This document shows positions 47,933 to 62,040 of a stretch of 64,000 nt of DNA, piece by piece. Within the stretch, counting starts at the first letter, position 1. Every line of letters starts with the position of its first letter. The stretch is from Klebsormidium nitens (Eukaryota > Plantae > Klebsormidiophyceae), in assembly GCA_000708835.1 (NCBI GenBank), contig DF236985.1:1-64000 (forward strand), read 5' to 3'. The position numbers and the translations under genes are program-made. The notes under the pieces are model-generated. The model did not search any database. It saw only the letters and a program-made list of their open reading frames with translations, and had not been told where the DNA came from.

Positions 47933-48130
47933 CTACGAACAGTAAGTGCATTCTTGGTCCTTGCCGAAGTGAATTTGCGAACCCGGCATGAAGGTTGTGA
48001 CTAAGAACTTGAGGAAGCGGTTGCGTAAACGGAGACAATTGACAATATACTGACCGTCGTGACGACGGTAATGGCTTGCCTCTTCTTTGATAAAATAGAC
48101 AGTGACATCGAAGATTTCATGTGTATCCAT
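47933..48130 (-). CDS. Hypothetical 65-aa ORF at the 3' end of the element
   Basis: ATG-initiated ORF co-oriented with the element genes, ending in CTYC; its stop lies within the candidate terminal hairpin. No recognisable family. Confidence 0.25.
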   Translation of the reverse strand: MDTHEIFDVTVYFIKEEASHYRRHDGQYIVNCLRLRNRFLKFLVTTFMPGSQIHFGKDQECTYCS

Positions 48131-48268
48131 ACTTGGAATCCAACATGATACGTTAGAGCATAGTGTGAATGTGCATAGAAGTACAGTTTCAATTTACATG
48201 TCTGACTGCTTCATACTCGTGCTGTTCGCAATGATTTGAAGGGATTCTGAACAGTATGTTGATTGTAA

Positions 48269-48796
48269 TTATGTTTGAAACCTTTCTATCTTGATTCCAT
48301 TGTTCCCTCGAACTATTGTTCCATATTTACTATCACGTATTTCAGAGATCCCGAAAATCAGTTCGTTCATTTTGTCGCTCATGTGCGCCTCTACAAGTTG
48401 TTCTTTGGTTACGCTGAACGTACATATTGCTGACTGGTAGCATGAAAAGACAGCTTGTTCTAAGGTCACTTGTCGAAAAGGAATCCCAAAGACTCGGCAC
48501 ACCTCCTGACTGGGTAAGACGTCGTCTTTCGCTGCTTTTACTAGTTTCTCTGCACCTATGGATACCAGGAAACGTACCTGTCTATATCTGTCTGCACTAC
48601 CAGGAGACGGCGAATGCGTTGTCGCCGCCACGACGTTACAATCAGACTTGTGCTGACGCCAGTGCTTTTTTTGATGTTCTTGACCACAGTAGTAGACCAA
48701 TTTACAGCTGCCGCAGCGAAGTTCAGACCGAGCACCACAAATTTGACAGTTATATGACTCAGGAACGACGCATTTTTCACGGGATTGTTGCTCCAT
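48269..48796 (-). CDS. MYND zinc-finger protein (175 aa), element cargo
   Basis: CQICGARSELRCGSCKLVYYCGQEHQKKHWRQHKSDC fits the MYND pattern CxxC..CxxC..YYC..HQ..HW..HK..C. Starts 112 bp after the RPA-like stop. Confidence 0.8.
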   Translation of the reverse strand: MEQQSREKCVVPESYNCQICGARSELRCGSCKLVYYCGQEHQKKHWRQHKSDCNVVAATTHSPSPGSADRYRQVRFLVSIGAEKLVKAAKDDVLPSQEVCRVFGIPFRQVTLEQAVFSCYQSAICTFSVTKEQLVEAHMSDKMNELIFGISEIRDSKYGTIVRGNNGIKIERFQT

Positions 48797-48907
48797 GCCG
48801 TTTTCGTCCTACGACTTCGACTTGCAATTAGATTTTTCTCGCCTGCCTATGTACACAGATTTTCTGGTCCGCTTATATCAGCTTGCAGTTACTCGACTTG
48901 ATGAAGT

Positions 48908-51900
48908 TTACTCTGCCTTGTACTTCTTCGAAAAGAATCCTTTCTCTGGCGGCAGCTCGATGCCCACAATATTGGCTTGGTATTGGCTGAATTGCGTGTT
49001 CGGATTCTCACGGATGCGCAGGTGCATCGCGAAGCGCTTGTTCTTCAGACGGGTGTTAAGGTTGTCCAGCTGTTCGTTTGGAGGTTTGATGCTGAAGCTC
49101 GTCAGGTGCGTGCCGGTGACGACGACGAAGTCGTTTGACCAGATTTTGACGGCCAGGACGTCCGCTGTACAAGGAGACGGTAGAAGTATAAGTTGCCGCT
49201 GAAGTCGGTTACCTCCGGCGAAGCAGTATCGACTACAGTCTTAGCTGAATTCAATGACTTCGATGAATCGGTTGCTAATGTCGATACTACTGTTGTAAGT
49301 GGTGTCTAATCTGTCATGCTGCGCGTAAGACAATTCTACTTTTATCTTCAAGCTCAGTCAACTTCGACCGTAATTTTCAATTCTGAGAAAATTTGGACTG
49401 TTGATCGTGTATTCAGAATCCTGCGATTGCATGATGATTCTATCGATCCAGGTAGGTTGAATCGGCCTACCTGCAGGGGCTGCTGTCTTGCACGGAACTG
49501 TGCGCGCGCACACGTGTAGGTGACGTAGCCGCGCGCGCATATGCTCGTTCTAAAAAAGTTTGAAGTCAAGTAAACAAAAAGAAATTCGACTACTCACGTC
49601 CTGCATCCACCCGGATGTCCACTGACACGGTGACTTCTACGCACGCGTCCGTCAGCGGTCCCGGCTGACATCCCTGCTCGCAGAAGAGCTGGCGCGTGAC
49701 CGGGTTTCTGCTTGCAGCACCGCTGCACTCGTAGCAGCCGTACGCGATGGAGTCGACTTTCGTGAAGTTGATGAACGTCGCAAGCACCGTCGCTGCAGTC
49801 CACTTGTTGCCGGCCAGAGATTGGACGACTCGAGACCACGGCATGATTCTGTCTTCGTTGACGATTCGGTAGGTCAGACCGATAGCAGCCACAGCAGCTG
49901 CTGACGCGTCACTCTTGCAGATGACAGTGCTGCGAGAAGAGACATCATAACAGTTATCTGCTGTTTTACATCACGGTTGCTCGGAAGCTTAAAACGCAGA
50001 CATCTCAAAGTTCGTCAATCAATGTCCGCCAGACGGAAATGTGAAACCTGTTTTAAATCTAAGCTGATCTCGACTTCGATAGTGAACGGATATTGTTCGT
50101 GTTACAGTCAGACTTCAAAGAACTTATGTTGAGCGTTATCTCAGTTTGCAATTCCTAGCAACTTCTGATTCAGCTACATCAGATAACCACAATAAGAGTT
50201 TTACGGGATAGAAAGCTTTTGCAGTTCTGCATATGTGGTAAACGTAAATCATCTGGTGAAGTCGTAAAAGTCTGAAAGAAGAAAAAAACGACGAAAAATC
50301 AGAAAAAATGTAAAAGACTCGATGCTATTAGACGAAGACTGACACGTGGCACGTGCTGATTGGCTGAACCGGAGAGTACCATCACAGAATGGTGCTGTCG
50401 TCTCGGCTTGTCATATTCAAAGACCGAGATGCCCGTACAGTGGGCGCCCATTCGCGTGCTATCATTGGCTTACCGGTTGACCAAAATAAGTGTGCTGTTC
50501 TTTTACGGATCCGAATTCTTATACGGAAGAAAGAAATTCACGAATCTTTCAAGAAATCTGCCTGCGAATATGTAGCTGCGGTTAACGCACAGTAAGTTGC
50601 GTGCAGAAATCTTACTTTCGCGTGCTCGAACAGCCCTGGTCTTCATCGTACTGTACTCCGCTGATGACCACGACGTCAGCACGGACCTTCAGCTGTTTGA
50701 GTTCAGGTAGGTGCGCCATGTCGCCCCAGATTGCGATGCTACCCATGATGCCGCTTTTGTCCTTTATGACAATTTTGACGACCTCGCGGTCACCTCTTGA
50801 CGTCATCGGTTTGCACACACGGCTCTTGTAGACCAGTAGACCTTCGATTTTGTGAACCTGTATTGGAGTAAATTCATGTGATGAGTAAGCAGGCGTTCGA
50901 AGTCTCTGATTTCCAACTGTATGTATTTTCTGCAGATGGATCTTACGACTGATCACGTACGCAACTTGCTGTTACAGAATCCTCTAGTTAATAACCATAT
51001 TCGGTTGACCGAACTTTTATCAGTTATCTTTTAATAGAACGCAATTCATGGAGAGACCAATCAGACCTGATCGACTGCAACGATTTCCTGCATGTACTAT
51101 GGCGCGGAGGACTTCGAAGATTGTGACAGAGAATCTTTGATTCCTACGGATCGATCTGAATACAAGCCTTCAAGCCTGGCACATGAGTGAGCGTCCTGTT
51201 TCAAAAACTTTGTTAACCTGGATTGCAAAGTTATGTTTATTTTGCAAACTTCTGGCTGGTGGTCATTATTATCAAAGTACGAGATGACATGCAAGCACAT
51301 CCTACGAATGAATTTGCGTCGGATTTGACTTACGCCGCCAGGTTGGAGAGCGTCGAAGCTGACTGGAGTTTCCACGATCGATACGATCTCCTCTTCAGAC
51401 TTCATGATCATGGTGCGTCCTTCCGTCACCTTCAGGGAAGTTGGATGATCCGTCAGGGAATACCTGTAAGGGAGAGAACATAGAACATTTGTCATAGTCG
51501 AACATAAGCGCAGGCTTGTAGTCGTGCATGCACGAGCCAGCTTGGTTTGCTGACTTGCAGATTCGAGGGATTCGACGCTAAGCAGCCGCCACGATGTTGA
51601 AATTCGTCAAATTCGCATATAGAAAGTTACTGACTACGACGGCTGGTGAAAGATGCGCGACACTACAGAAGATTATGACGTTGAATAAGACGGGAGATTG
51701 TGCTAACTCAGAGGTGGTTGGACGTTACTGACCTGACAATGCCATGACTTCCAAATGAAGCCGGCGTTCTAATTTATCGCTTAAACGCAAGAAACGCTTC
51801 GTTTGTGACTCAGACAGCATTGTCAAAAGCCCAGTCTGAGTTGCATACCAAGCAATCAAACATAGCCAGACAGAAGATTCAGCACACGTCAGAAGCAGAG

Positions 51901-52213
51901 AACAAGACGCTTACCTGCATGAAGCGACCGTCGGACGGTACAGGAGTATGGTGCTTTCTTTTGCGCATTTGTCGCTCACATACTCCACAGAATGCTTGTC
52001 CCTGCTTGTGGCTTCCACCGTGATTCTATTCCCTTCTTTGTCTTGGAAGACTGCAGCTGTAGTGAACAGGTGTCCAAATGGCAGCTCGCGCACTTTGGGC
52101 TTGTTGTTTTGCGTGGGACTATCTAGGTCAACTATTTTCCCATGCACTTGGAAGAAATCGGAGTCGACTGGGAAGTTTGCGATCTGACTCACGGTGACTG
52201 TGGGCACCTCCAT
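48908..52213 (-). CDS. RPA70-like ssDNA-binding protein (OB-A, OB-B, Zn-containing OB-C), 419 aa; exons 52213-51915, 51463-51334, 50857-50616, 49929-49598, 49164-48908
   Basis: Five GT-AG exons total 1260 nt with consistent phases. OB-fold signatures: VHGKIVD..AAVFQDKEGNRITV, YSLTDHPTSLKV, KIVIKDKSGIMGSIAIWGD, and a C-terminal AYGCYEC..FCEQGC zinc finger followed by VKIWSNDF..VTG..RFAMHLRI. Confidence 0.8.
50345..50363 (-). promoter_or_regulatory. CCAAT-N9-CCACG motif (ERSE consensus), in RPA-like intron 3
   Basis: Minus strand CCAAT cagcacgtg CCACG; 19/21 identical to the copy at 53667-53687. Function untested. Confidence 0.45.
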
Positions 52214-53511
52214 TGCTGCAGCCGCTTGTGCGCACATGCTTAAAGATGGGAGCTTGCTTCTGTGGAGACGAGCTACGCGTGCGCAACAGAAGGACGCTTC
52301 TGCTGGGGAAAGGAATTGAATTGAGCCGTCTCGCGAAATGATCAGAATTAGAAGAGTTCGAGAGTGGACTTGAAGAACGTGGGCGAACGGATGACAGCTT
52401 GGAAATAGTAGACAGAAAAAATTCAGTCAACGAAAGCGTTCAGAATAGGCAGAGTTATAGATTGCAGAAGAGTCAGCAGTAGTAAAACTCGTCGTGTAAG
52501 ACAGCGAACTTCGAACGAACGGTAGAAGAAGCCGATGTCATGCGCACGTGTCGTAGAATTCGAGACCGGAAGGGCAATAGTCGAAGCTCGAGCGTCAAGA
52601 GAATAGTTCTGGTTAAGTCTGACGACGAAAATGGAAGCAGCTGACGTCGAAGAAATCCACGTACTCACACCGTCAGCAGCAAATGCGCCTCCTCAGCGTG
52701 TGAATCAAAACGCTGTAGTGACAGAGTCATAAGCCATGCGACATGCATGCTCGTGAGCATGCACACGACGACGACTTCAACAACCGTAAGCACTAGAAAG
52801 ACGAAATCGCTGGTTACCAGAAACAGACGAAGGGTTTCGATGTCGTCATACGTGACACGTGCGTACGGCAGTAAAGTTGTACGGCTTCGCGCGCGTACGA
52901 GTGAGAGACAGACTGTGCAGAAGAAAATTCCACCTACCGGTACTTACTTCGCTGTATTCACCTTCTCAGCTGGATCTGATGCAACCGTTGGCTTCTTGAT
53001 CCCTCGTTGTCCACGTTCGCCGAATGCAGCTTTCTTCGCAGCTTTTTAAACCTGTAGGCGGGACAAATCGTCAGCAATTGCACGATACCGAGAAAACAGC
53101 AAGCCATAAGAATCAGGAAAACAGTTCGATCCCTGCTGAAACATTTTCCAGTGTCATCAAATTCTGGGTACGTAGCTAAAGTTTAATGCTTGTGTAAAAC
53201 TTGCGACGCACAGAGAAGGAAATCAAATAAGCGTGAATGACCTTGCAGAGAACGGAACGTAGCTCCGCTTGCCTAGAGCAAAGTCATTTTACACCTGGAG
53301 AAGACAGATAAGAATCCGACAGAATTCTTCACAGCGCGTGCAATAAAAAGATGGATAGGAGATAAAACTGAAGAGGTTCTTTACTACGCGTGCAAAAACT
53401 GGTCAGATTAGAAGAGGTAGGGAGAAAAACCCTGAAGAAATCCTTCACTGTGCACGTAGACGTTGATCAAAGTAGGAAGGAAAGACAACAAACAATAAGG
53501 GAATCCCTCAC

Positions 53512-53656
53512 CGCACGCGTCGGCTGTTTTAATCGGCAATATGAATCGCTCCTTCTCCATCACCAAGTGCAGCTCGTCCAAGAAGTCCGCCGACGAGTCC
53601 GGCTGGGACATCACCCTGAAGCAGACCTCCATTGCGCCACCTGCCATCCCCGACAT
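53512..53656 (-). other. Exon-like coding segment between RepHel and the RPA-like gene (MSGMAGGAMEVCFRVMSQPDSSADFLDELHLVMEKERFILPIKTADAC)
   Basis: GC3-rich codons ending in a good donor (G|gtgagg) at 53512; no downstream exon resolved. Confidence 0.3.
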
Positions 53657-53668
53657 GCTACGGCGCCA

Positions 53669-53687
53669 CGTGGCGCTTGCTGATTGG
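53669..53687 (-). promoter_or_regulatory. CCAAT-N9-CCACG motif (ERSE consensus) upstream of the accessory genes
   Basis: Minus strand CCAAT cagcaagcg CCACG, overlapping a G-box (CACGTG). Confidence 0.45.
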
Positions 53688-54019
53688 ACCGTAGTTATCC
53701 AGCTCAACGGAAAAGTAAGCGAAATCGACGAGCATGCTGCAGACTTAGCGGATAACGTAGAGACCTCAAAAACTTACGAGCGGCAGAGTAGCAGAAATTG
53801 GGTTAGGATAAGGATTAGTTTTAAAACTTAGGTGGGTTTAAGGGCATGCGTAATGGCTTGAACGGTTTTCGTTTTCGTGGATCGACTTGTAGTGGTCAGA
53901 GAAAGATGGCAGGCAGCGGAAAGCAAAGAAGAGATTCTTGAGTTTTCAAACAAAGGAAGAAAATCCTACCGCAGACTTTGAAGCAAACATTAGCGAAGAC
54001 GAACGAAACAATATGCTAC

Positions 54020-57000
54020 TTATCGACAGCTGACTGAATGAAGCGCTATATGGAGCGGACTGTGGTCGCTCCAATACGCCTCTAGATTCCGGACTGCAGC
54101 TGTACTTGCTAAGGAAGATGACACCCAGACAGCGTCAAGCATGCTCCCCTGATTAGTGGTCGGCAGCGAATTCAGTAGGCTGGCTCCGAATGAATGCATT
54201 ATGCTAATGAGTTTTTGAGCAGTATTAGATTTCTGCAACAGGTCGATATTAAAGTCACCAGCGCAAATGAAAGATGGCGTTGCTCCCGGTGCTCGTCGGA
54301 ATATATCGTCGAGGAAACGTCTTAATGTTTCTAAGAAGTTGTCGACAAGAAAGTCAGACGGTGATCTGTAGACTGCAATGAGGTAAAAGTCAGGACACGG
54401 CCGGCCCCGGATGTGAATGCAAAGTACCTGCGAGTGACAATCAGATAGCGCGGAGTGAAACGTAGCCGTTAATGCTTTGTCCTGCTTCGATAAGTAGATC
54501 AGAACGTTATCAAATCCGCTTCTTTCGCTGGCGTTTGCTTCAGCCCGATAGACTTCGAAATTTGAGCGGGACAACGTTGATAAAGACCATGACGGTGAAG
54601 TTCTTGTTTCTGTGCACACGATGATGTGACTGCGATTGAAATTAGGATCTGCAAAGAGGTCGGATTCATGTAAGCGGAAAGAACGCACGTTATGTAAAAT
54701 TAGGTGGAGTTCTCGATCACATCCAGGACTGAAAGGTACCTGCGGAATACAGGGTACAACGCACGCTTTTTGGCGAAGACGAGCCATTTCCATTATCACC
54801 TTATGGCTCACCGTAATCTCATCGAAAGCAGCATCTAGAATGAAGACATCTTTCAAGCTGGGAAATCGACTAAGGCCGACATAATGACGACCGGCGTCAA
54901 TATGCCGCTTCGAGGCACCGCGAAAATCGACTGCGCCTTTTCGTACTGTCATGCCTTGTGTGTGATAGAAAGTTCCGGCAGTTGCCGGTCGTAGCGGAAA
55001 CTGCATCCGCAATATGGTACTGTCAATTCGCCGGCTCGCCTGAAACTTACGCGATATGCGGAACACTGGCGTCCATGTTGGATTAACAGAAGGACACAGA
55101 CGATATAGATTTACGTGTTGTTTGCGAGTATGCCGTCCGACTCGTTCGTCAACGAATTCTATCCAGACCGCATGGGGATCGGCGCCCCCGACATCATGAA
55201 AACGTCTGATATAGCCGGTCGCTCCATTGTATAAGCCGTCTGGGATGTCAATGTTACAAGTGACTTCAACGAGAAGTCCGACTTTGAGAAGTAGAGTTGC
55301 ATATAAAGTCGCCGTTTCAGAATCTTGCATTGTGATCGCTTTCGTCAGAAAGTATTGACGGTCTCGAGAAGAAATGCTGCAAGACAACACTTCATCTCTT
55401 GCTCTAAGAGAAAATTCGGGCCCTCCTGTAAGGCGTAATACAAGTGAATTGTGCATGTCCCTTTTTTTGTGCGTTGCAAAAATGTGTTTGTCGAATGCGG
55501 AATAATCCGCCGGCAGGTGCAGCGTATCAACTACCCTTGTTTGAAATAGGGCTAAATCGTCAGCGGTGTGAGCGCCAACACGCAAACGATTGAGCGCTTC
55601 CGCGAAGTTAAGACATTCTTTCTGACGCATGATATCCACGAGTTCGTACATACGTACGTTTTCTTCCCACAAATTGCTGACAATCACACCTTGCTTACGA
55701 ACACCCTCGAAAACATATCCGTCCCACAACGGTTTCAGTTGAAAAAGGTCACCTCCGAAAATAACCGGCAAGCCGCCAAAAGGCTCAGCAGACTCGAAGA
55801 TCTCCTGCAATCTATAGTTTATTATTTGAAGGAGTTTAGCCCCAGTCATTGAAATTTCGTCGATCACAATGCCCCGTAAGTCTGCGTAGTTGTCTCTTAA
55901 AGCAGCTTTTTTTTCGCCACTTATCTGAATATACGTTTCTACTTTCGCATAAAGGGGTATTTTGAAGGCGGAATGAATAGTAACTCCATCAATGTTGAAG
56001 CCAGCGCTCCCCGTAAATGCGGTCAGTAGAAGTTTTAAAGACGTTGGTTGCAATCCCAGAGTTCCGCTGAACGTACGAATTACAAGCTGGGTAAGGCATC
56101 GAATCACCAAACTTTTTCCAGTCCCTGCACCTCCGGTTAAGAATTCCACGAGTTGCCAATCACCTTGAAATTTTAAGCGGTGAATAACGTGATTGATGTA
56201 TGCTCGTTGTGGTAATGTCAATATTCGCATCTGACTGCGGAAATCTTGGTCATCCAACAGAACCTGCGAATGCGGCAGTTTCTCCTCAGCTGATGCATCC
56301 GCCGACGGGTGAAGTTCTGGGGGAACTGTAAATTCTGACGGCACAGCGCAATCTGCTGAAGCGCTGTCTGAAATATGCACTGCAGCAGTGTCGTCTAATT
56401 CGTCGAATAATTCGACATCCATAGCAGCCATAGCTTCTGCGTATTGCTCAACATCCTCCCAGGCAATACATGAGTTGTAATTGTATGATGCGACTACAGC
56501 TTCAATCGAGTCTTTATTGGCATCGTACCTGGTTTCAAAATCCGTGTACGATGCAAGCAAAATTCGGTCGATTTGCGCGTTCAAGGTCGCCAGATCCTCG
56601 CCATCGAACTGCCAAGGCAGAAACAGGAGAAGTTGTTCTCGGAAGAACAACTCGGGATCTGAATTTTTTCTGTATCCAACATATCGGATAATCTTGGCTT
56701 TACTGCGCTTTCGATATCTGCGCATACCCGTAGAATTTTGTGTAGAATCAAGCTCATCGGCTACTGTAAGATCAGCAGTTTCTGCACTCGGAACAGTATC
56801 GTCATTTATTTCTTCGTCGGCAACTGGAGCTGTTGACGCAGGCTCATACCAAGCAGCGAAGTCGGCTAGTGTCAAAGTTTCCGTACCCTGTAAAATCGGA
56901 TTCCGTAAGCGCATGGCGTATTTGTCGACAATATTGGTATACACGCACTCAGTTGAATCCTCCGGGAGCAGACGTAAAGCATGGTCATTTTTGACTAGAA

Positions 57001-60000
57001 AAGTGCGATCCTCGACGGGTCCAGTTGGAATGAATATGTGATCACGGGAGCTACGTCTGTACGGTATACCGATGCAACCGTACACAGCTTCTTGCGCGGA
57101 AACTTCTTGCCCTTTTAACAGCGTCATTCCCACGTGTCTTATGGCCCTTCGAAGTTCCATATTTCCTCGCCGTGCATCGGCGTATGCTTGATCTAATAGT
57201 TTGCTCATTTTGTAGTCGGTCTTCATCATATACGAACTGATATAGTTGGCTGCTGCGTATGCCTCCAGTACGAACTGAAAGTCCATGTTAGTTCCATCTA
57301 AAAGTTTGAGGAGTTTTGGATTATAGTTGTTGATGTAAACTTCGCAAGGACGTCGTTTCAAGAAAACGACTGGTTTGACTAGCTTTGAGCGTAATCCGAG
57401 CACATATTCCGAAGGCGTCAAAGAAAGGCGACTATAAAATTCAAGAGTATCCAGTTCACGTACACCTGGATCTTTATCTTCCAGATCTTTCAGACCTGCA
57501 GCAATCCGCCGATGATATTCGGCGCATTCCAATTTTTTAGATTCTGAAAGACCTTCCGGCAGAGGATGAAGAATCATAGTTTCGTGCAAAGGGGGCCGCG
57601 GAAAGCTGAAACGGCAGACCCTCTTATTGCTAGGACTGCGACGTTTTAAACAGTAACCACGACTGTGGTGATGGAATTGGCCCGCTAAATTAGCAGGCGC
57701 AGCCGCGGTCGACGAACACGTAACGTGCGCATCTATAAACGCGACGACTGTAGAGTCGTCGTCAATGCCAAATTTTGGCGCATCTGCTACGTAAAAGGCG
57801 CAGTGCGTATGCGGCGTACCCCGCTGCTGGAATTCATCCCTCCAAAAGAAATCTGTGACGTGTCCGATCAACGACGAGTATTTACAGATTGCATGCACCA
57901 AACGGGACCTTCGATTATCATAGCATCGAGAAACTGTAACGGGATCATTTCTAATCAAACGAACTTTATCGATCCACGGGAATTCAAGCGCAGCCGCTTC
58001 TGATACCATAATTCCCGTTGCCAAATAATGCAGATTCCGTATTAAAGCTCCCCAGTGAGTTTCAGCCATCGTGAAAGTACCAAAAAATTGAAAGGGACCG
58101 AGCTGCCTTATTGTTGCGAAGGCTTCTTGTTTGCCCTGACGGTTGTATTCAGGACTGCCACGTAGCGTTTTGAAATCGCGATATCCTACGTTTTGAGCCA
58201 TAAGCGAGGACTTGATTTCAGAATTACGTAGCTCACCGACCGTCGGAAAAGCAAGGCTGGGTAACTTTTTCTTACGTAGATGAACCCACGATTGACTGGC
58301 AACCATAGCAGCCTGCAGTTTCCGTAATTTGAAGAAGATATTACTAGTATGATACGCAAAACGACGATCTACATTAGTTAGTTCAAACTTGCATATTTTG
58401 CTGTAACTCAGTTGACTAGTAGGTCTAGCACAACCGTTGAACAAGGAAGGGAAAGCCTTCTCCTCTGCATATGGATCTTGTAACATACCCAACGGTGTTT
58501 GTCCTTCGCTTGGAGCAACGTTGACACCGAAATTGTGGAACGAAACAAACGACGGAACATCTTGAAGCATAGTCTCTTCTGGCGGTAATCGACCGGTGTC
58601 CTCATCTCCGGAATCCGACTCCGAAGATGACGATGACGACACGTCATCCAGTGTTATTACTCCACCCTCAATGCCTAGCTGATCACGAAACAAGAAAGAC
58701 TCTACGTGATGCGCATCAGTACGCAGATCCGCATCAGCTAGCCAGTCTGAACGTACAGATACACCTGCTTCTCGCCACAACGTTGGGCGCGACGTCAAAT
58801 CAACTACGGCGTCTCGTAATTTTGCTGGGCGCACGTTTTCTGCCGCCCTATAACATGCTTTATTGCGAAGTTTATATTTGATGGCGACTGCAATTGTTCC
58901 CTCCGAGTCTACAAACCTCGGCAATGCAAGTTGTATCTTGCTGAGATCGGCGGGCACGTTGACAACCATGCCTTTTAAAGCCAACTGTCCTAACCTTCTC
59001 GGCCCACCAGCAGCAGAAGGAGGCAATCCACGCATTTTCATAAACGGCAAACGTAAAGCAAGTAGATCATTTTCCATACTGGTGAGCCCTTGCAGCGCCG
59101 GAGTCAGAGCCGGAAAATCCGGTTGACGAGTTGGCGCGCCTGGTGGGCAACGACGTTTCTTTACGTATCCAGCGCACGTAGAGCAGATCCATTCTTTGTT
59201 ATCTACAGAACATCGCCCAGACAACCAAGCAAGCGCTTCAGCATCAGTTAACCGACTCCTTAGCTTATCGTTAACCTCCCGCACAGAGTGCGAGAACCAA
59301 GAACGTCGACAAGAAGTGCAGACGAAGAGCGGACCCTCATTACTTGCCGCGCGAAATTCGCGGACGATCTCGTCAAGATCGTCGGTATCAGCATCATTCG
59401 TCGGGGACACATTCTCCGACGTCATAGCTGATATGCTTCTGTCGAGCTCCATTTTAACAGCCAGAGACAATTGTAGAGAATCAGAGACGGGCAGATTAAG
59501 AGCATGTCTTCGAGAAACTCGACGAGCCACGTAATCATATGCTCGAGCGGCTTCCGTAGCAGTGTCGTAATAGCCGAGGTCGTAGCTTTTACATAGTACA
59601 TTAATTCGAGCTCGGAACCGTATTCGATCGTGATACCGTGTTTCATAAACGCCGAAGAATTGCGGGTGAGAAGATTCATTTGGAGCCGCAGACGCCTGAG
59701 TCGCAGACTCTTCTCTGGGAGCACTACTGCGTTGATTGAGCTTACCTCTGAGCAGCATCAAGCATTCATCAGCATAAGCACGCTCCGCTGCATCCACACC
59801 AGCTCCGTCGGGAAAGTTGAGCGGCCTCGGGTACGCGCCGTCCGCCACGAGAGCTTGAATAACGTAGTCGTAAGTCCTGGCGGCCTGCTCTTCAGACTCG
59901 AAGGCACCAACGTGATACTGCCTGCGGCTAAACTGACACTTAATCTCGAACGGCCGTTGCAGGCGCTTCGACCTATGAACTCCCCTATATTGACCAGCAC

Positions 60001-60613
60001 CACTTTTTACAGCAGCCGACTTTAGACGAAACTGACAAGAACTACAGGTCTTAGATCGCTGTAGATTCGGCAATTGGCACTGCGGGCAGACATTCTCACG
60101 ATGATGCAGCTGAAACCTATGCTTACAGTTTCCACATACGTGAGCTTGGCTAAATACCCGTTGAGTGCACCCTGGGCATTCTTTCAAACGCCTCTTTCCA
60201 CTACCGCCGCAACTATGACAGCTAAGAGCGCTGGGAAGTACTTTGCTGGTACAATGCATCTTCCAGGGGCAGAGTATCATGCTGAGCCCGTTTGAACCAT
60301 CCTGGCTATAATCAGCGGTCTCAGCGGGCATATCCCGGTCGTCAGAGCTTACAGATCCTCCAGAACTGTCCTGCGCATATCGCCGTACAAGCACTACGTA
60401 CTTCATCTCCCATGCTTGTACACCTTTCATCATTGCTCCTTCCAAAGAAGTCGGCGTCATGACTACAATTGAAAAACCAGCTTCGTCTCCTTCCCAGCTT
60501 GTAACTTTGCCCACACAATGCTGAAAGCGATCATCAAGAGGGGCTGCTCGAACATGAACACCCAGCAGAACCTGCGGCCCGTACCTATCCACGTCGTCAG
60601 CCGGAGAAGCCAT
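54020..60613 (-). CDS. RepHel transposase, 2197 aa, intronless: zinc ribbons - AP2 - AP2 - Cys cluster - HUH Rep - PIF1 helicase - APE/EEP endonuclease
   Basis: ATG at 60613. Rep: EFQQRGTPHTH (HUH, ~57803-57835) and YISSYMMK (YxxxY). Helicase: LTGGAGTGKS, IVIDEISM, GGDLFQLKP, QFPLRPA, HTQGMT, YVGLSR. APE/EEP: HNVRS, VCTET, AVYRSP, GDFNID, SMLDAVWV, SDHSPL. AP2-like: YRGVHR..GAFESEEQAARTYD..LNFP and FFGVYE..GYYDTATEAARAYD..LNLP. Confidence 0.95.
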   Translation of the reverse strand: MASPADDVDRYGPQVLLGVHVRAAPLDDRFQHCVGKVTSWEGDEAGFSIVVMTPTSLEGAMMKGVQAWEMKYVVLVRRYAQDSSGGSVSSDDRDMPAETADYSQDGSNGLSMILCPWKMHCTSKVLPSALSCHSCGGSGKRRLKECPGCTQRVFSQAHVCGNCKHRFQLHHRENVCPQCQLPNLQRSKTCSSCQFRLKSAAVKSGAGQYRGVHRSKRLQRPFEIKCQFSRRQYHVGAFESEEQAARTYDYVIQALVADGAYPRPLNFPDGAGVDAAERAYADECLMLLRGKLNQRSSAPREESATQASAAPNESSHPQFFGVYETRYHDRIRFRARINVLCKSYDLGYYDTATEAARAYDYVARRVSRRHALNLPVSDSLQLSLAVKMELDRSISAMTSENVSPTNDADTDDLDEIVREFRAASNEGPLFVCTSCRRSWFSHSVREVNDKLRSRLTDAEALAWLSGRCSVDNKEWICSTCAGYVKKRRCPPGAPTRQPDFPALTPALQGLTSMENDLLALRLPFMKMRGLPPSAAGGPRRLGQLALKGMVVNVPADLSKIQLALPRFVDSEGTIAVAIKYKLRNKACYRAAENVRPAKLRDAVVDLTSRPTLWREAGVSVRSDWLADADLRTDAHHVESFLFRDQLGIEGGVITLDDVSSSSSSESDSGDEDTGRLPPEETMLQDVPSFVSFHNFGVNVAPSEGQTPLGMLQDPYAEEKAFPSLFNGCARPTSQLSYSKICKFELTNVDRRFAYHTSNIFFKLRKLQAAMVASQSWVHLRKKKLPSLAFPTVGELRNSEIKSSLMAQNVGYRDFKTLRGSPEYNRQGKQEAFATIRQLGPFQFFGTFTMAETHWGALIRNLHYLATGIMVSEAAALEFPWIDKVRLIRNDPVTVSRCYDNRRSRLVHAICKYSSLIGHVTDFFWRDEFQQRGTPHTHCAFYVADAPKFGIDDDSTVVAFIDAHVTCSSTAAAPANLAGQFHHHSRGYCLKRRSPSNKRVCRFSFPRPPLHETMILHPLPEGLSESKKLECAEYHRRIAAGLKDLEDKDPGVRELDTLEFYSRLSLTPSEYVLGLRSKLVKPVVFLKRRPCEVYINNYNPKLLKLLDGTNMDFQFVLEAYAAANYISSYMMKTDYKMSKLLDQAYADARRGNMELRRAIRHVGMTLLKGQEVSAQEAVYGCIGIPYRRSSRDHIFIPTGPVEDRTFLVKNDHALRLLPEDSTECVYTNIVDKYAMRLRNPILQGTETLTLADFAAWYEPASTAPVADEEINDDTVPSAETADLTVADELDSTQNSTGMRRYRKRSKAKIIRYVGYRKNSDPELFFREQLLLFLPWQFDGEDLATLNAQIDRILLASYTDFETRYDANKDSIEAVVASYNYNSCIAWEDVEQYAEAMAAMDVELFDELDDTAAVHISDSASADCAVPSEFTVPPELHPSADASAEEKLPHSQVLLDDQDFRSQMRILTLPQRAYINHVIHRLKFQGDWQLVEFLTGGAGTGKSLVIRCLTQLVIRTFSGTLGLQPTSLKLLLTAFTGSAGFNIDGVTIHSAFKIPLYAKVETYIQISGEKKAALRDNYADLRGIVIDEISMTGAKLLQIINYRLQEIFESAEPFGGLPVIFGGDLFQLKPLWDGYVFEGVRKQGVIVSNLWEENVRMYELVDIMRQKECLNFAEALNRLRVGAHTADDLALFQTRVVDTLHLPADYSAFDKHIFATHKKRDMHNSLVLRLTGGPEFSLRARDEVLSCSISSRDRQYFLTKAITMQDSETATLYATLLLKVGLLVEVTCNIDIPDGLYNGATGYIRRFHDVGGADPHAVWIEFVDERVGRHTRKQHVNLYRLCPSVNPTWTPVFRISRKFQASRRIDSTILRMQFPLRPATAGTFYHTQGMTVRKGAVDFRGASKRHIDAGRHYVGLSRFPSLKDVFILDAAFDEITVSHKVIMEMARLRQKACVVPCIPQVPFSPGCDRELHLILHNVRSFRLHESDLFADPNFNRSHIIVCTETRTSPSWSLSTLSRSNFEVYRAEANASERSGFDNVLIYLSKQDKALTATFHSALSDCHSQVLCIHIRGRPCPDFYLIAVYRSPSDFLVDNFLETLRRFLDDIFRRAPGATPSFICAGDFNIDLLQKSNTAQKLISIMHSFGASLLNSLPTTNQGSMLDAVWVSSSLASTAAVRNLEAYWSDHSPLHIALHSVSCR

Positions 60614-60939
60614 TATTGCGGTCAGCAGTATGCTGCAGCAAACAGAATTCAGCAAAGCAGAAGACACAGATTAAGACGCAGCCTGCATGCACAGAGAAAG
60701 ACTTGCAGCACTCGTACGAAGTTGAAAGCCAGCACGACCTGACTGTCATGCGAAGCAGCTCGATGCGAGGGATAAACAGAGCATTGACAATCGAGGCCGC
60801 CTGGATCGGCCGCGTTAAAGCGAACGACTGTGACAATAAAGACCAACGATCGGGTACGCACCGTTAGTACTAATAAGGCGACATACTATACAGAATGGCT
60901 AGGTACGCACCGCCGCAGTCGAAATCACAGGCACGCGGG

Positions 60940-60995
60940 GTAGCATGCACAGTATGCATGCTACGCAACAGTATGACCTATCGGTACGATACCGA
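60940..60995. other. Stem-loops upstream of RepHel
   Basis: Perfect 10-bp stem gtagcatgca-cagta-tgcatgctac (60940-60964), and tcggta-cga-taccga (60981-60995), the latter repeated at ~61085. Confidence 0.6.
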
Positions 60996-62040
60996 CTCAC
61001 GCAAAAGCACGAAGCTACGCAGATATATCACTGATATCAGCGGTACGTACCCGATCAGCTCATTTACTGCGACAAATCCTCGATCCGGTACGATACCGAG
61101 ACTCACAGAAGCCCGAGGCGATTTCCTATACGAGGTAGGTACGTACCAAGTAGTGTAGGCTAGCGGCTAGCCTGGCTAGGTACGTAGATAGTCGGTACGC
61201 AGTAAACAGTACGCAATGACCCAGATTGAGCCCCGTTCGACGGCGACTTGCGTCAGATTGAGCCGAGTCTAAAATGTTCGATTCGAAAACCGCAATCCGC
61301 ACCGCAACGCGGCACCCAGTCGAGGCGGGGGGTTGTCGCCTTATTTGGGCAAATTTTTATGCCGTACCGTACGTTTTATCGTCGAACTCAGGCAAGCGAA
61401 GTCGGCACAAACAGGTCGATCGCCGGGTCCGCGCCGCGGCGTCGTACAGTAGCAAAAAACCCCATTCCCATGGCTGCCCTCTTCCAAAGGAAGAGGCAAG
61501 CCAATATACTGACACGCGTTTGGCAACCGCAAAGAGTGGGCCACGTTAAACCTGATTCAGCTGTCAGTAAGAGCAACTTTTGATGCCAGTGCATTCATCA
61601 CTGGGCAGCTAATAGCAAGTCGCATTTCGCATTCACAGGACTCGTCGAGATGGCTATCAACACAACGGAGCAAGTTTATGACCGACTCACCGTACTTCGA
61701 ATTCATAAGCTCTGAATTTCCCGGCAAGCCTAAAAGATCACCGGGTTGCGGGGCAAAGCCCCATCAGCAAAATATGATGCATACAAATGTTCCGGTGATC
61801 ATATGTATCGTGCAGAGAAAGCATTGCGAATGTGCATACAATCTCTGTCTTCTTGATGTTACTTGCGATCTTAAAAGAACATGCAATGATTAGCTATTGT
61901 AAGGCAACAAGTGGAGGGCATGCGTATTCATCGTCGGAACGCTGGAAAAGGTCGTCGAAGGAGAAGAGGCGTCCCGTACAGCGTCGAACAGAAGCACGCA
62001 AAGGAGGTCACACGACTGGCGGCCTCAGTGGATGTTCATG

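What the first reader, a model, noticed from the sequence alone, without database searches (positions are those of the whole stretch)
59489..59989. Tandem AP2/ERF-like DNA-binding domains inside a rolling-circle transposase
Two AP2-like units (~59989-59807 and ~59660-59489) keep the YRGV/FFGV start, the LGxF/Y.T..EAARAYD helix and the LNFP end, in frame between a double zinc ribbon and the Rep domain. AP2 is known in plant transcription factors and in mobile HNH endonucleases and integrases. In a RepHel it could recognise the element's termini or steer insertion toward GC-rich promoters, and it links mobile elements to the double-AP2 architecture of plant regulators (inference).
Basis: partly seen in the sequence, partly recalled or inferred. 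Interest (0 to 1): 0.85.

Follow-up and report, generated by a model that had tools for sequence, protein, structure and literature searches.

The report
Helentron transposase with two AP2 domains
An intact, apparently transcribed rolling-circle transposon (Helentron) of a streptophyte alga encodes a transposase with two genuine AP2 DNA-binding domains, the fold used by plant AP2/ERF regulators, and related elements share this fusion, which I could not find described for Helitron-type transposons.

Summary
A single stop-free 2215-aa ORF (54020-60667, minus strand) is a Helentron transposase. From N to C it has a Tudor-like barrel, a double zinc ribbon, AP2 unit 1 (59804-59998), a helical linker, AP2 unit 2 (59483-59668), DUF6570, the Rep HUH nuclease, a PIF1 helicase and an APE endonuclease.

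- **AP2 support:** Pfam AP2 scores 34.3 bits for the two units together (cut-off 33.3; E 2.9e-8). There are 858 sequence relatives, the best at E 5e-36. An AlphaFold model (pLDDT 84.7) has only plant AP2/ERF structures as its significant PDB matches.
- **Conservation:** the same AP2 pair, in the same position, occurs in six other related elements from two divergent families. It is absent from 19 more distant Helentron/Helitron2 transposases. It is therefore an old, retained part of this lineage and not a recent gene capture.
- **Function:** not shown. My best guess is recognition of conserved DNA blocks I found in the element's 5' end.
- **Plant link:** a special tie to the plant double-AP2 family is not supported. 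The nearest cellular AP2s are from haptophytes, picozoans and a prasinophyte.

The scan had already noted and followed up this fusion on other copies in the same genome. I found no paper describing it.

The parts
48053..61507 (-). Proposed full Helentron, about 13.5 kb: 5' end near 61507, 3' stem-loop ending at 48053.
   Evidence: A 14-bp terminal inverted repeat links the two ends. Similarity of the 5' region to L002 starts at 61507. A stem-loop follows the right repeat. This layout matches the canonical HLE2 structure described in PMC11417382. No second copy lies in the window, so the ends are inferred and not proven.
61471..61503 (-). Left terminal inverted repeat (61490-61503), which pairs with the adjacent 61471-61485 to form a 5' hairpin.
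   Evidence: One search gives the repeat. One search gives DNA fold -11.9 kcal/mol, z -3.85. The same hairpin arms with a different loop occur in L002 (-11.2 kcal/mol, z -3.2).
61234..61450 (-). Conserved collinear non-coding blocks B (61435-61450), C (61367-61387), D (61274-61286) and E (61234-61246). They are candidate cis sites for the transposase.
   Evidence: Exact or near-exact matches of 13-21 nt, in the same order and with similar spacing, occur upstream of the transposase genes in L002, L003, L004, L006 and L007. The proteins of those elements are only 36-48% identical to the window's over the N-terminal part.
60853..61194 (.). Cluster of CGTACC/GGTACG hexamers just upstream of where the transcript-like contigs end.
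   Evidence: 11 copies in 60668-61400 against 0.36 expected from the rest of the window. The motif is absent from the upstream regions of L001-L007, so it is specific to this family.
54020..60667 (-). Transposase ORF, 2215 aa without a stop. The probable true start is the ATG at 60613 (MASPADD), which aligns with the N-termini of relatives.
   Evidence: HUH motif HTH at 57794-57817, two tyrosines (YISSY) at 57221-57244, Walker A at 56111-56134 and Walker B at 55847-55867 are all read directly from the sequence.
60383..60613 (-). N-terminal conserved domain (residues 19-95), modelled as an SH3-like, Tudor-like barrel.
   Evidence: Conserved in seven elements. No Pfam hit. AlphaFold pLDDT 84.5. 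Foldseek best E is only 0.036, but most of the listed rows are Tudor, PWWP, Agenet or KOW barrels (TM to target 0.65-0.71 for PHF20, PHF1 and TDRD3 Tudor domains). Support is weak to moderate.
60032..60256 (-). Double zinc ribbon (residues 138-212).
   Evidence: Pfam DZR 32.1 bits against cut-off 27.3, and DZR_2 24.8 bits. It is an insertion found only in the window's family; the other aligned relatives lack it.
59804..59998 (-). AP2 unit 1 (residues 224-288).
   Evidence: Pfam AP2 22.1 bits, E 2e-4. Strands and helix in the model. Forms a 100/99 clade with unit 1 of P0002, P0005 and P0011.
59723..59791 (-). Conserved linker helix (residues 293-315; motif ERAYADECL..LRGKL).
   Evidence: Helix 74-96 of the model, pLDDT about 90. 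E, R, A, C and L are invariant among four relatives.
59483..59668 (-). AP2 unit 2 (residues 334-395).
   Evidence: Pfam AP2 20.0 bits, E 8e-4. Model. Its best matches are the unit 2 sequences of related elements.
58793..59110 (-). DUF6570, a marker domain of HLE2 (Helitron2/Helentron) transposases.
   Evidence: Pfam 25.9 bits against cut-off 24.3. Its marker status comes from PMC11417382.
57800..58387 (-). Rep (HUH) nuclease domain.
   Evidence: Helitron_like_N 65.5 bits.
55598..56212 (-). PIF1-type SF1 helicase domain.
   Evidence: PIF1 89.2 bits.
54053..54412 (-). C-terminal apurinic/apyrimidinic-type endonuclease, the feature that defines a Helentron.
   Evidence: Exo_endo_phos_2 37.6 bits against cut-off 27.4.
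48269..48796 (-). MYND-finger ORF near the 3' end, on the same strand as the transposase.
   Evidence: zf-MYND 43.1 bits. A zf-MYND ORF also follows the Rep fragment in the related contig L004.
48053..48085 (-). Right terminal inverted repeat (48072-48085), then TT, then a 7-bp stem with a 3-nt loop (48053-48069).
   Evidence: One search gives -7.4 kcal/mol, z -3.1.

Best explanation
The two AP2 units are a genuine, retained double-stranded-DNA-binding module of the transposase of a Klebsormidium-lineage Helentron family.

**Shown:**
- The protein is one continuous RepHel-endonuclease ORF with intact catalytic motifs.
- Both units have the AP2 sequence signature and the AP2 fold.
- The pair, in the same order and position, occurs in every N-terminally complete relative found (seven elements in two divergent subfamilies). 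It is absent from more distant HLE2 transposases.
- Unit 1 is orthologous to unit 1 and unit 2 to unit 2 across elements, so the pair predates the split of these families.

**Inferred:** the AP2 pair anchors the transposase on specific duplex sequences of the element. The most likely sites are the conserved blocks in the 5' subterminal 270 bp, next to the terminal hairpin. This would bring the HUH nuclease and helicase to the correct end for nicking and strand peeling. It parallels the N-terminal region that Helraiser needs to bind and cleave its DNA.
For: - **Architecture and integrity:**
- **AP2 identity:** Pfam 34.3 bits, E 2.9e-8. 858 homologues, and six of the nine top hits scanned are strong Pfam AP2 proteins. 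PDB sequence hit to WRI1. Model pLDDT 84.7 with two beta3-alpha units. Foldseek's top nine matches are all AP2/ERF, with 1gcc at TM 0.80 and rmsd 2.1 A.
- **Retention across elements:** the pair is found in P0002, P0005, P0011, P0172, P0174 and the upstream ORF of L007. In P0005 and P0174 DUF6570 and Rep follow in the same protein. In L004, L006 and L007 the contigs carry them, and L006 and L007 also carry the helicase and endonuclease.
- **Lineage restriction:** 19 further HLE2 RepHel relatives, 26-39% identical in Rep and from animals and metagenomes, have no AP2 unit.
- **Unit orthology:** (clades at 100/99, 100/98 and 100/99).
- **Likely activity:** contigs of three runs from three studies cover the ORF with zero differences and no joints. 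They stop 100-200 nt upstream of the ATG. These runs are only guessed to be RNA.
- **Candidate cis sites:**
- **Precedent:** the N-terminal region of Helraiser is required for DNA binding and cleavage (PMC4778049).
Against: - No experiment or computation here links AP2 to any particular DNA site.
- The conserved 5' blocks could instead be bound by Rep, the zinc ribbon or the DUF6570 region, or they could be promoter elements.
- The blocks are not significantly repeated at the 3' end.
- Each AP2 unit alone is below Pfam's cut-off.
- The tryptophans that contact DNA in AtERF1 are replaced (F/Y in strand 2, H in strand 3). That residue mapping rests on my own knowledge of 1gcc, read against alignment A2.
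- Unit 1 is weak in the second subfamily (13-21 bits), so it may be decaying there.
- The alignment used for the model is dominated by canonical AP2 proteins, which biases the fold toward AP2.
- Element ends rest on one copy only.
Confidence: 0.6

Rival explanations
1. The AP2 pair selects insertion targets and does not recognise the element's own ends. It would bind host duplex motifs, perhaps together with the N-terminal Tudor-like barrel reading chromatin marks, and so tether the transposition complex to preferred genomic sites.
For: An N-terminal Tudor-like domain is conserved next to the AP2 pair, which suggests chromatin targeting. Conserved cis blocks were found only at the 5' end and not at both ends. 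Many transposases and integrases use accessory readers for targeting (general knowledge).
Against: No insertion-site data exist, because only one copy is in the window. The Tudor assignment is weak (best E 0.036). Conserved subterminal DNA blocks exist and need a reader.
Confidence: 0.22
2. The AP2 pair regulates transcription of the element itself, as an autoregulatory activator or repressor acting on the 5' region, and plays no part in DNA cleavage or strand transfer.
For: AP2 domains are classically transcription-factor domains. Conserved blocks and a dense family-specific CGTACC cluster lie just upstream of where the transcript-like contigs end.
Against: The domain is fused in frame to the catalytic protein in all relatives and is never seen as a separate product. 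No spliced or shorter AP2-only form appears in the contigs (contigs are a poor test). The CGTACC cluster is not shared by relatives that keep the AP2 pair.
Confidence: 0.1
3. The AP2 units are a passenger. A host AP2 gene fragment was captured by a Helitron-type element, as these elements often do, and happens to be read in frame without contributing to transposition.
For: Helitron-like elements are known for gene capture (PMC4778049, PMC11417382). Unit 1 of the second subfamily is degenerate.
Against: - The pair keeps its position, order, frame and hallmark residues across seven elements whose N-terminal parts are only 36-48% identical.
- The best overall identity to any non-element protein among 1.84 billion representatives is 33-35%. 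The best single unit is 44% identical. No recent donor is therefore visible.
- The linker helix between the units is conserved too.
Confidence: 0.05

Closest known systems
Helentron / HLE2 rolling-circle transposons (Poulter 2003; Thomas and Pritham; HELIANO subgroup b, PMC11417382)
   Same: The core is the same: Rep HUH nuclease, PIF1 helicase, C-terminal APE endonuclease and the DUF6570 marker. The element also has short terminal inverted repeats and a stem-loop after the right repeat.
   Different: The N-terminus carries a Tudor-like barrel, a double zinc ribbon and two AP2 domains. AP2 is not among the accessory domains listed for HLEs in the papers I could read (RPA, OTU, EN, Herpes_teg_N, TIR, SET). 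No held paper pairs AP2 with a Helitron or Helentron transposase. The left repeat also forms a hairpin of its own at the 5' end.
Helraiser (bat Helitron, HLE1) N-terminal DNA-binding region
   Same: An N-terminal region ahead of RepHel that is needed to bind and cleave the element's DNA (PMC4778049). This is the functional analogy I propose.
   Different: Helraiser's region has a zinc-finger-like motif, not AP2. It belongs to the other major clade (HLE1). The binding shown there was to single-stranded oligonucleotides, whereas AP2 is a duplex-binding fold.
Plant AP2/ERF transcription factors, including the double-AP2 protein WRI1 (PDB 7wq5) and AtERF1 (1gcc)
   Same: They share the fold and the hallmark motifs YRGV, LG.F, AA.AYD and LNFP. 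Two units in tandem align collinearly with WRI1.
   Different: The units are fused to a transposase. Similarity is low (12-25 bits). The linker is longer, about 45 aa, with its own conserved helix. The tryptophan positions are substituted. There is no phylogenetic affinity to streptophyte AP2s that I could detect.
Multi-AP2 proteins of algae and protists (Cymbomonas, Picozoa, Diacronema, Pavlova, marine metagenomes)
   Same: These are the closest AP2 sequences outside the elements: 38-43 bits per unit, and up to 44% identity per unit in a metagenome protein.
   Different: They are cellular proteins with 2 to 12 AP2 repeats and other domains (RING, PHD, Myb, Tudor). None of those scanned has Rep or helicase domains.
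AP2 domains of other mobile elements: HNH-AP2 homing endonucleases and AP2-like N-terminal domains of phage and Tn916 integrases (Magnani 2004; Balaji 2005, as cited in PMC1702500)
   Same: The principle is the same: an AP2-type DNA-binding domain attached to a mobile-element nuclease or recombinase.
   Different: The catalytic partner differs: here it is a HUH Rep, helicase and APE endonuclease, not HNH or a tyrosine recombinase. No HNH or integrase domain was found. The host is a eukaryotic streptophyte alga.

Membership tests
AP2/ERF DNA-binding domain (Pfam PF00847) | Profile match at or above the curated cut-off | tested here: met
   The two units together score 34.3 bits against 33.3 (E 2.9e-8). 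Each alone is below the cut-off (22.1 and 20.0 bits), and the whole-protein scan missed it. The test is met, but narrowly.
AP2/ERF DNA-binding domain (Pfam PF00847) | Three-stranded antiparallel sheet packed against one C-terminal helix | tested here: met
   The model has E11-13, E21-27, E30-37, H40-56 for unit 1 and E121-126, E129-138, E141-148, H151-165 for unit 2, at pLDDT 84.7. Foldseek's top nine PDB matches are all AP2/ERF. Caveat: the input alignment is rich in canonical AP2 proteins.
AP2/ERF DNA-binding domain (Pfam PF00847) | Hallmark motifs (Y/F)xGV, LGxF/Y, AAxAYD and LNFP | tested here: met
   Read directly and in alignment A2. Unit 1 has YRGV, VGAF, AARTYD and LNFP. Unit 2 has FFGV, LGYY, AARAYD and LNLP.
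AP2/ERF DNA-binding domain (Pfam PF00847) | Base-contacting Arg and Trp residues of the sheet, as in AtERF1 | tested here: inconclusive
   By alignment the strand-2 Trp is F or Y in all element units, and the strand-3 Trp is H in unit 1, as in many protist AP2s. The Arg of YRGV and the Glu of the EI(R/K) motif are kept in unit 1. Mapping to AtERF1 contacts rests on my own knowledge of 1gcc, not on a tool result.
AP2/ERF DNA-binding domain (Pfam PF00847) | Sequence-specific binding to duplex DNA | not testable with these tools
   Needs EMSA, DAP-seq or a protein-binding microarray.
Helentron (HLE2 with endonuclease) | Rep HUH motif with two catalytic tyrosines, fused to a PIF1-type helicase | tested here: met
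   Helitron_like_N 65.5 bits and PIF1 89.2 bits. HTH at residues 953-955, YISSY at 1142-1146, Walker A GGAGTGKS at 1512-1519.
Helentron (HLE2 with endonuclease) | C-terminal APE-type endonuclease and the DUF6570 marker | tested here: met
   Exo_endo_phos_2 37.6 bits and DUF6570 25.9 bits. These criteria come from PMC11417382.
Helentron (HLE2 with endonuclease) | Short (12-16 nt) terminal inverted repeats and a stem-loop after the right repeat | tested here: met
   14-nt repeat at 61490-61503 and 48072-48085. Stem-loop at 48053-48069. This is based on a single copy.
Helentron (HLE2 with endonuclease) | Insertion between T and T without target-site duplication | tested here: inconclusive
   The exact ends are not fixed. 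The same 10 nt (CAGTATATTG) stands at both junctions. This is unexpected and unexplained, and no empty site is available.
Plant double-AP2 subfamily (APETALA2/ANT/WRI1) | Two AP2 repeats orthologous to plant R1 and R2, joined by the conserved plant linker | tested here: not met
   - Two repeats are present, but deep branches are unresolved.
- The linker is about 45 aa with a different conserved helix.
- WRI1 scores only 25 bits, against 38-43 bits per unit for protist AP2s.
- No plant-type motifs occur in any of the 150 best relatives.
- No plant sequences could be put in the tree.
HNH-AP2 homing endonucleases | HNH nuclease domain next to AP2 | tested here: not met
   No HNH family appears among the Pfam hits at E<=1.

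The most novel reading that the evidence does not exclude
The AP2 pair of this streptophyte-alga Helentron lineage is a surviving example of the traffic between mobile elements and host regulators that produced AP2 transcription factors. Either cellular tandem-AP2 regulators descend from such a transposase module (domestication), or the element took the module from an ancient algal regulator and has used it ever since to recognise its own ends. In both cases AP2 would be shown to work as a transposon-end or target reader in a eukaryote of the plant lineage.
Probability: 0.12. Interest if true: 0.85.

Novelty: new variant of a known kind. Interest (0 to 1): 0.6.

Why it matters
- **A new type of N-terminal domain for Helitron-type elements.** In the papers I could read, the N-terminal part of these transposases is described only as a zinc-finger-like region (Helraiser). 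How they find their ends and their targets is still poorly understood. A lineage that uses a well-understood duplex-binding fold (AP2), is intact and probably expressed, and comes with candidate conserved cis blocks, offers a tractable system for that question.
- **Relevance to the origin of AP2 regulators.** The old proposal that plant and apicomplexan AP2 regulators arose from DNA-binding domains of mobile elements has mostly been argued from bacterial and phage HNH endonucleases and integrases. Here a eukaryotic transposase with two AP2 domains sits in a streptophyte alga. My data do not show a direction of transfer or a special tie to plant AP2/ERF genes, so that part remains a lead only.

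Tried and rejected
- **Full-length relatives by the N-terminal part.** Searching residues 130-400 of the whole protein found nothing. Relatives exist only as fragmentary gene calls, which other searches found.
- **Exact-sequence look-ups.** The transposase and the MYND ORF are not on record. I therefore could not confirm the organism from annotation. 'Klebsormidium nitens' comes from earlier scan notes.
- **JGI metagenome scan with protein patterns.** No relatives.
- **Metagenome scan with conserved block C.** Six 20-22-nt matches on contigs with no Helentron protein and no other shared block. I treat these as unrelated.
- **Domain tree of 278 AP2 units, then 86 units.** Shallow clades are well supported, but the origin of the element's AP2 units is unresolved. 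No plant or host AP2 sequences were available by reference, so they are not in the tree.
- **Other copies or fragments in the window.** None, so the ends and target site cannot be confirmed by comparison.
- **5' blocks at the 3' end.** Not above chance: 7 shared 7-mers, and 50 of 500 random pieces did as well.
- **CGTACC cluster as a shared binding site.** Rejected, because it is absent upstream in all relatives.
- **N-terminal domain in Pfam.** No hit. The Tudor-like reading rests on a model and on weak Foldseek E-values.
Full report
**What is there**

The region lies inside one stop-free ORF of 2215 codons on the minus strand, 54020-60667. Relatives align from the ATG at 60613 (MASPADD), which is the likely start.

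Pfam places these domains on the whole protein:
- DUF6570, residues 520-625
- Helitron_like_N (Rep), 761-956
- PIF1 helicase, 1486-1690
- Exo_endo_phos_2 endonuclease, 2095-2205

The HUH motif, the two tyrosines and Walker A and B are intact when read directly. According to the HELIANO paper, Rep plus helicase plus endonuclease plus DUF6570 defines the Helentron branch of the HLE2 group (PMC11417382).

**The AP2 claim**

The whole-protein scan did not list AP2. Scanning the pieces did:
- Unit 1 (residues 224-288, window 59804-59998): 22.1 bits, E 2e-4
- Unit 2 (residues 334-395, window 59483-59668): 20.0 bits, E 8e-4
- Both units together: 34.3 bits, E 2.9e-8, just over the 33.3-bit cut-off

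The piece upstream is a double zinc ribbon (32.1 bits against 27.3).

Independent lines of evidence agree:
- An exhaustive phmmer search of 1.84 billion representatives with the 181-aa pair gave 858 hits at E<=1e-3. Six of the nine top hits that I scanned are multi-AP2 proteins scoring up to 250 bits in Pfam.
- The alignment shows the usual YxGV, LGxF, AAxAYD and LNFP columns in both units.
- The single sequence finds WRI1 among PDB chains at E 1.3e-4.
- An AlphaFold model (pLDDT 84.7) has two three-strand-plus-helix units joined by a long helix.
- Foldseek's nine best PDB matches are all AP2/ERF structures. WRI1 scores E 1.3e-6, and AtERF1 gives TM 0.80 with rmsd 2.1 A.

Two caveats apply. 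Each unit is weak on its own, and the modelling alignment was rich in canonical AP2 proteins.

**Is the fusion an accident?**

It is not. The same N-terminal arrangement, a conserved about 75-aa domain, AP2 unit 1, a conserved linker helix and AP2 unit 2, occurs in all of the following:
- P0002, P0011 (which continues into the DUF6570 region) and P0172 (with a DUF6570 hit)
- P0005 (with DUF6570 and the start of Rep)
- P0174
- the ORF upstream of P0175 on contig L007

Contigs L006 and L007 also carry the helicase and endonuclease. These sequences are 36-48% identical to the window's protein over the N-terminal part and form two subfamilies.

Most come from one run, SRR23617307. That run also holds a fragment 83-91% identical to the window's family, so it is probably a related alga. 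One comes from SRR23617210 and one from an ENA assembly.

The 19 next-closest HLE2 transposases, 26-39% identical in Rep and from corals, bivalves and metagenomes, show no AP2 unit.

Unit 1 matches unit 1 best, and unit 2 matches unit 2 best, across elements. A careful tree gives 100/99, 100/98 and 100/99 support for these groups, while units 1 and 2 are never sisters. The pair is therefore older than the split of these families and has been retained.

The double zinc ribbon is an insertion specific to the window's family. Unit 1 is weak in the second subfamily (13-21 bits).

**Origin**

This is unresolved. The best non-element proteins are 33-35% identical overall, and the best single unit is 44% identical, in a metagenome protein. 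Those that carry names come from Cymbomonas, Picozoa, Diacronema and Pavlova.

No hit suggests a recent host donor. Scores to land-plant structures are lower than scores to protist units. No plant-type motif occurs in any of the 150 best relatives. I could not add host or plant sequences to the tree.

**Activity**

Contigs from three small assemblies in three studies cover the ORF with no differences and no joints. Their sizes, 36-41 Mb against about 104 Mb for the DNA runs, suggest transcriptomes, but the tool marks RNA as a guess. The contigs stop at 60765 or 60818, which is 100-200 nt upstream of the ATG. This fits a full-length unspliced transcript. Breakage of a DNA assembly at a repeat boundary is not excluded.

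**Element ends and candidate binding sites**

Read on the minus strand:
- Similarity to relative L002 begins at 61507.
- A 14-nt repeat at 61490-61503 is inverted at 48072-48085.
- The left repeat forms a hairpin with the next 15 nt, and the same hairpin is conserved in L002.
- The right repeat is followed by TT and a 7-bp stem-loop. This is the canonical HLE2 layout.

Within the first 270 nt, four further blocks of 13-21 nt are shared, in order and with similar spacing, with L002, L003, L004, L006 and L007. The proteins of those elements differ from the window's by more than half of their residues. Non-coding conservation of this kind implies cis function. These blocks are my candidates for what the N-terminal DNA-binding domains read. 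The analogy is Helraiser, whose N-terminal region is needed for DNA binding and cleavage (PMC4778049).

This step is inference. The blocks are not enriched at the 3' end, and they could be read by other parts of the protein.

**Literature**

Full-text searches pairing Helentron, Helitron or Helitron2 with AP2 found no report of an AP2-bearing RepHel. The HELIANO and Replitron papers do not mention AP2. That AP2-type domains occur in mobile-element proteins in general is known (PMC1702500 citing Balaji 2005 and Magnani 2004). Repbase could not be consulted.

Earlier notes of this scan report the same fusion in other copies of this genome and name the organism as Klebsormidium nitens. I did not verify the organism.

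**Verdict**

This is a real, retained tandem-AP2 module in a Helentron transposase. It is a new variant of a known kind of element. Its function is inferred and not shown.

Noticed in passing
window 61507-61516 and 48043-48052 (minus strand): The same 10 nt, CAGTATATTG, stands at both junctions of the proposed element: just before and into the 5' start, and directly after the 3' stem-loop. Helitron-type elements are not expected to make target-site duplications. It could be a preferred target that resembles the joined ends, or terminal redundancy.
   Followed up: partly
window 60383-60613 (-), residues 19-95: A conserved N-terminal domain with no Pfam hit is modelled as an SH3-like barrel. It most resembles Tudor, PWWP and Agenet chromatin readers (Foldseek best E 0.036, TM to target 0.65-0.71). 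It may be a chromatin-reading module in the transposase.
   Followed up: partly
window 60853-61194: Eleven CGTACC/GGTACG hexamers against 0.36 expected, including two GGTACGTACC palindromes, lie just upstream of where the transcript-like contigs end. The GTAC core recalls SBP-box binding sites (my own knowledge). The cluster is absent upstream in related elements.
   Followed up: partly
window 48269-48796 (-): A MYND-finger ORF (43 bits) lies inside the element near its 3' end. A MYND ORF also sits in the related contig L004, so it may be a regular passenger or accessory gene of this Helentron lineage.
   Followed up: partly
window 51097-52430 (-): Several short ORFs lie between the transposase and the MYND gene and have no Pfam hit. 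An earlier scan note on another copy mentions an RPA-like ssDNA-binding gene in this element family. The X1 contig appears to extend to about 52350, beyond the transposase stop.
   Followed up: no
L006 (7790 bp) and L007 (7370 bp): A second, divergent AP2-Helentron family from the same run as a close relative of the window's family. Its reading frame is broken between Rep and helicase (L006) or between AP2 and DUF6570 (L007). These are either decayed copies or assembly or intron effects.
   Followed up: no
L008-L013: Block C of the 5' end (about 20 nt) matches six unrelated metagenome contigs exactly, with no Helentron protein nearby. It is probably a conserved coding stretch of some bacterial gene and not related.
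   Followed up: partly
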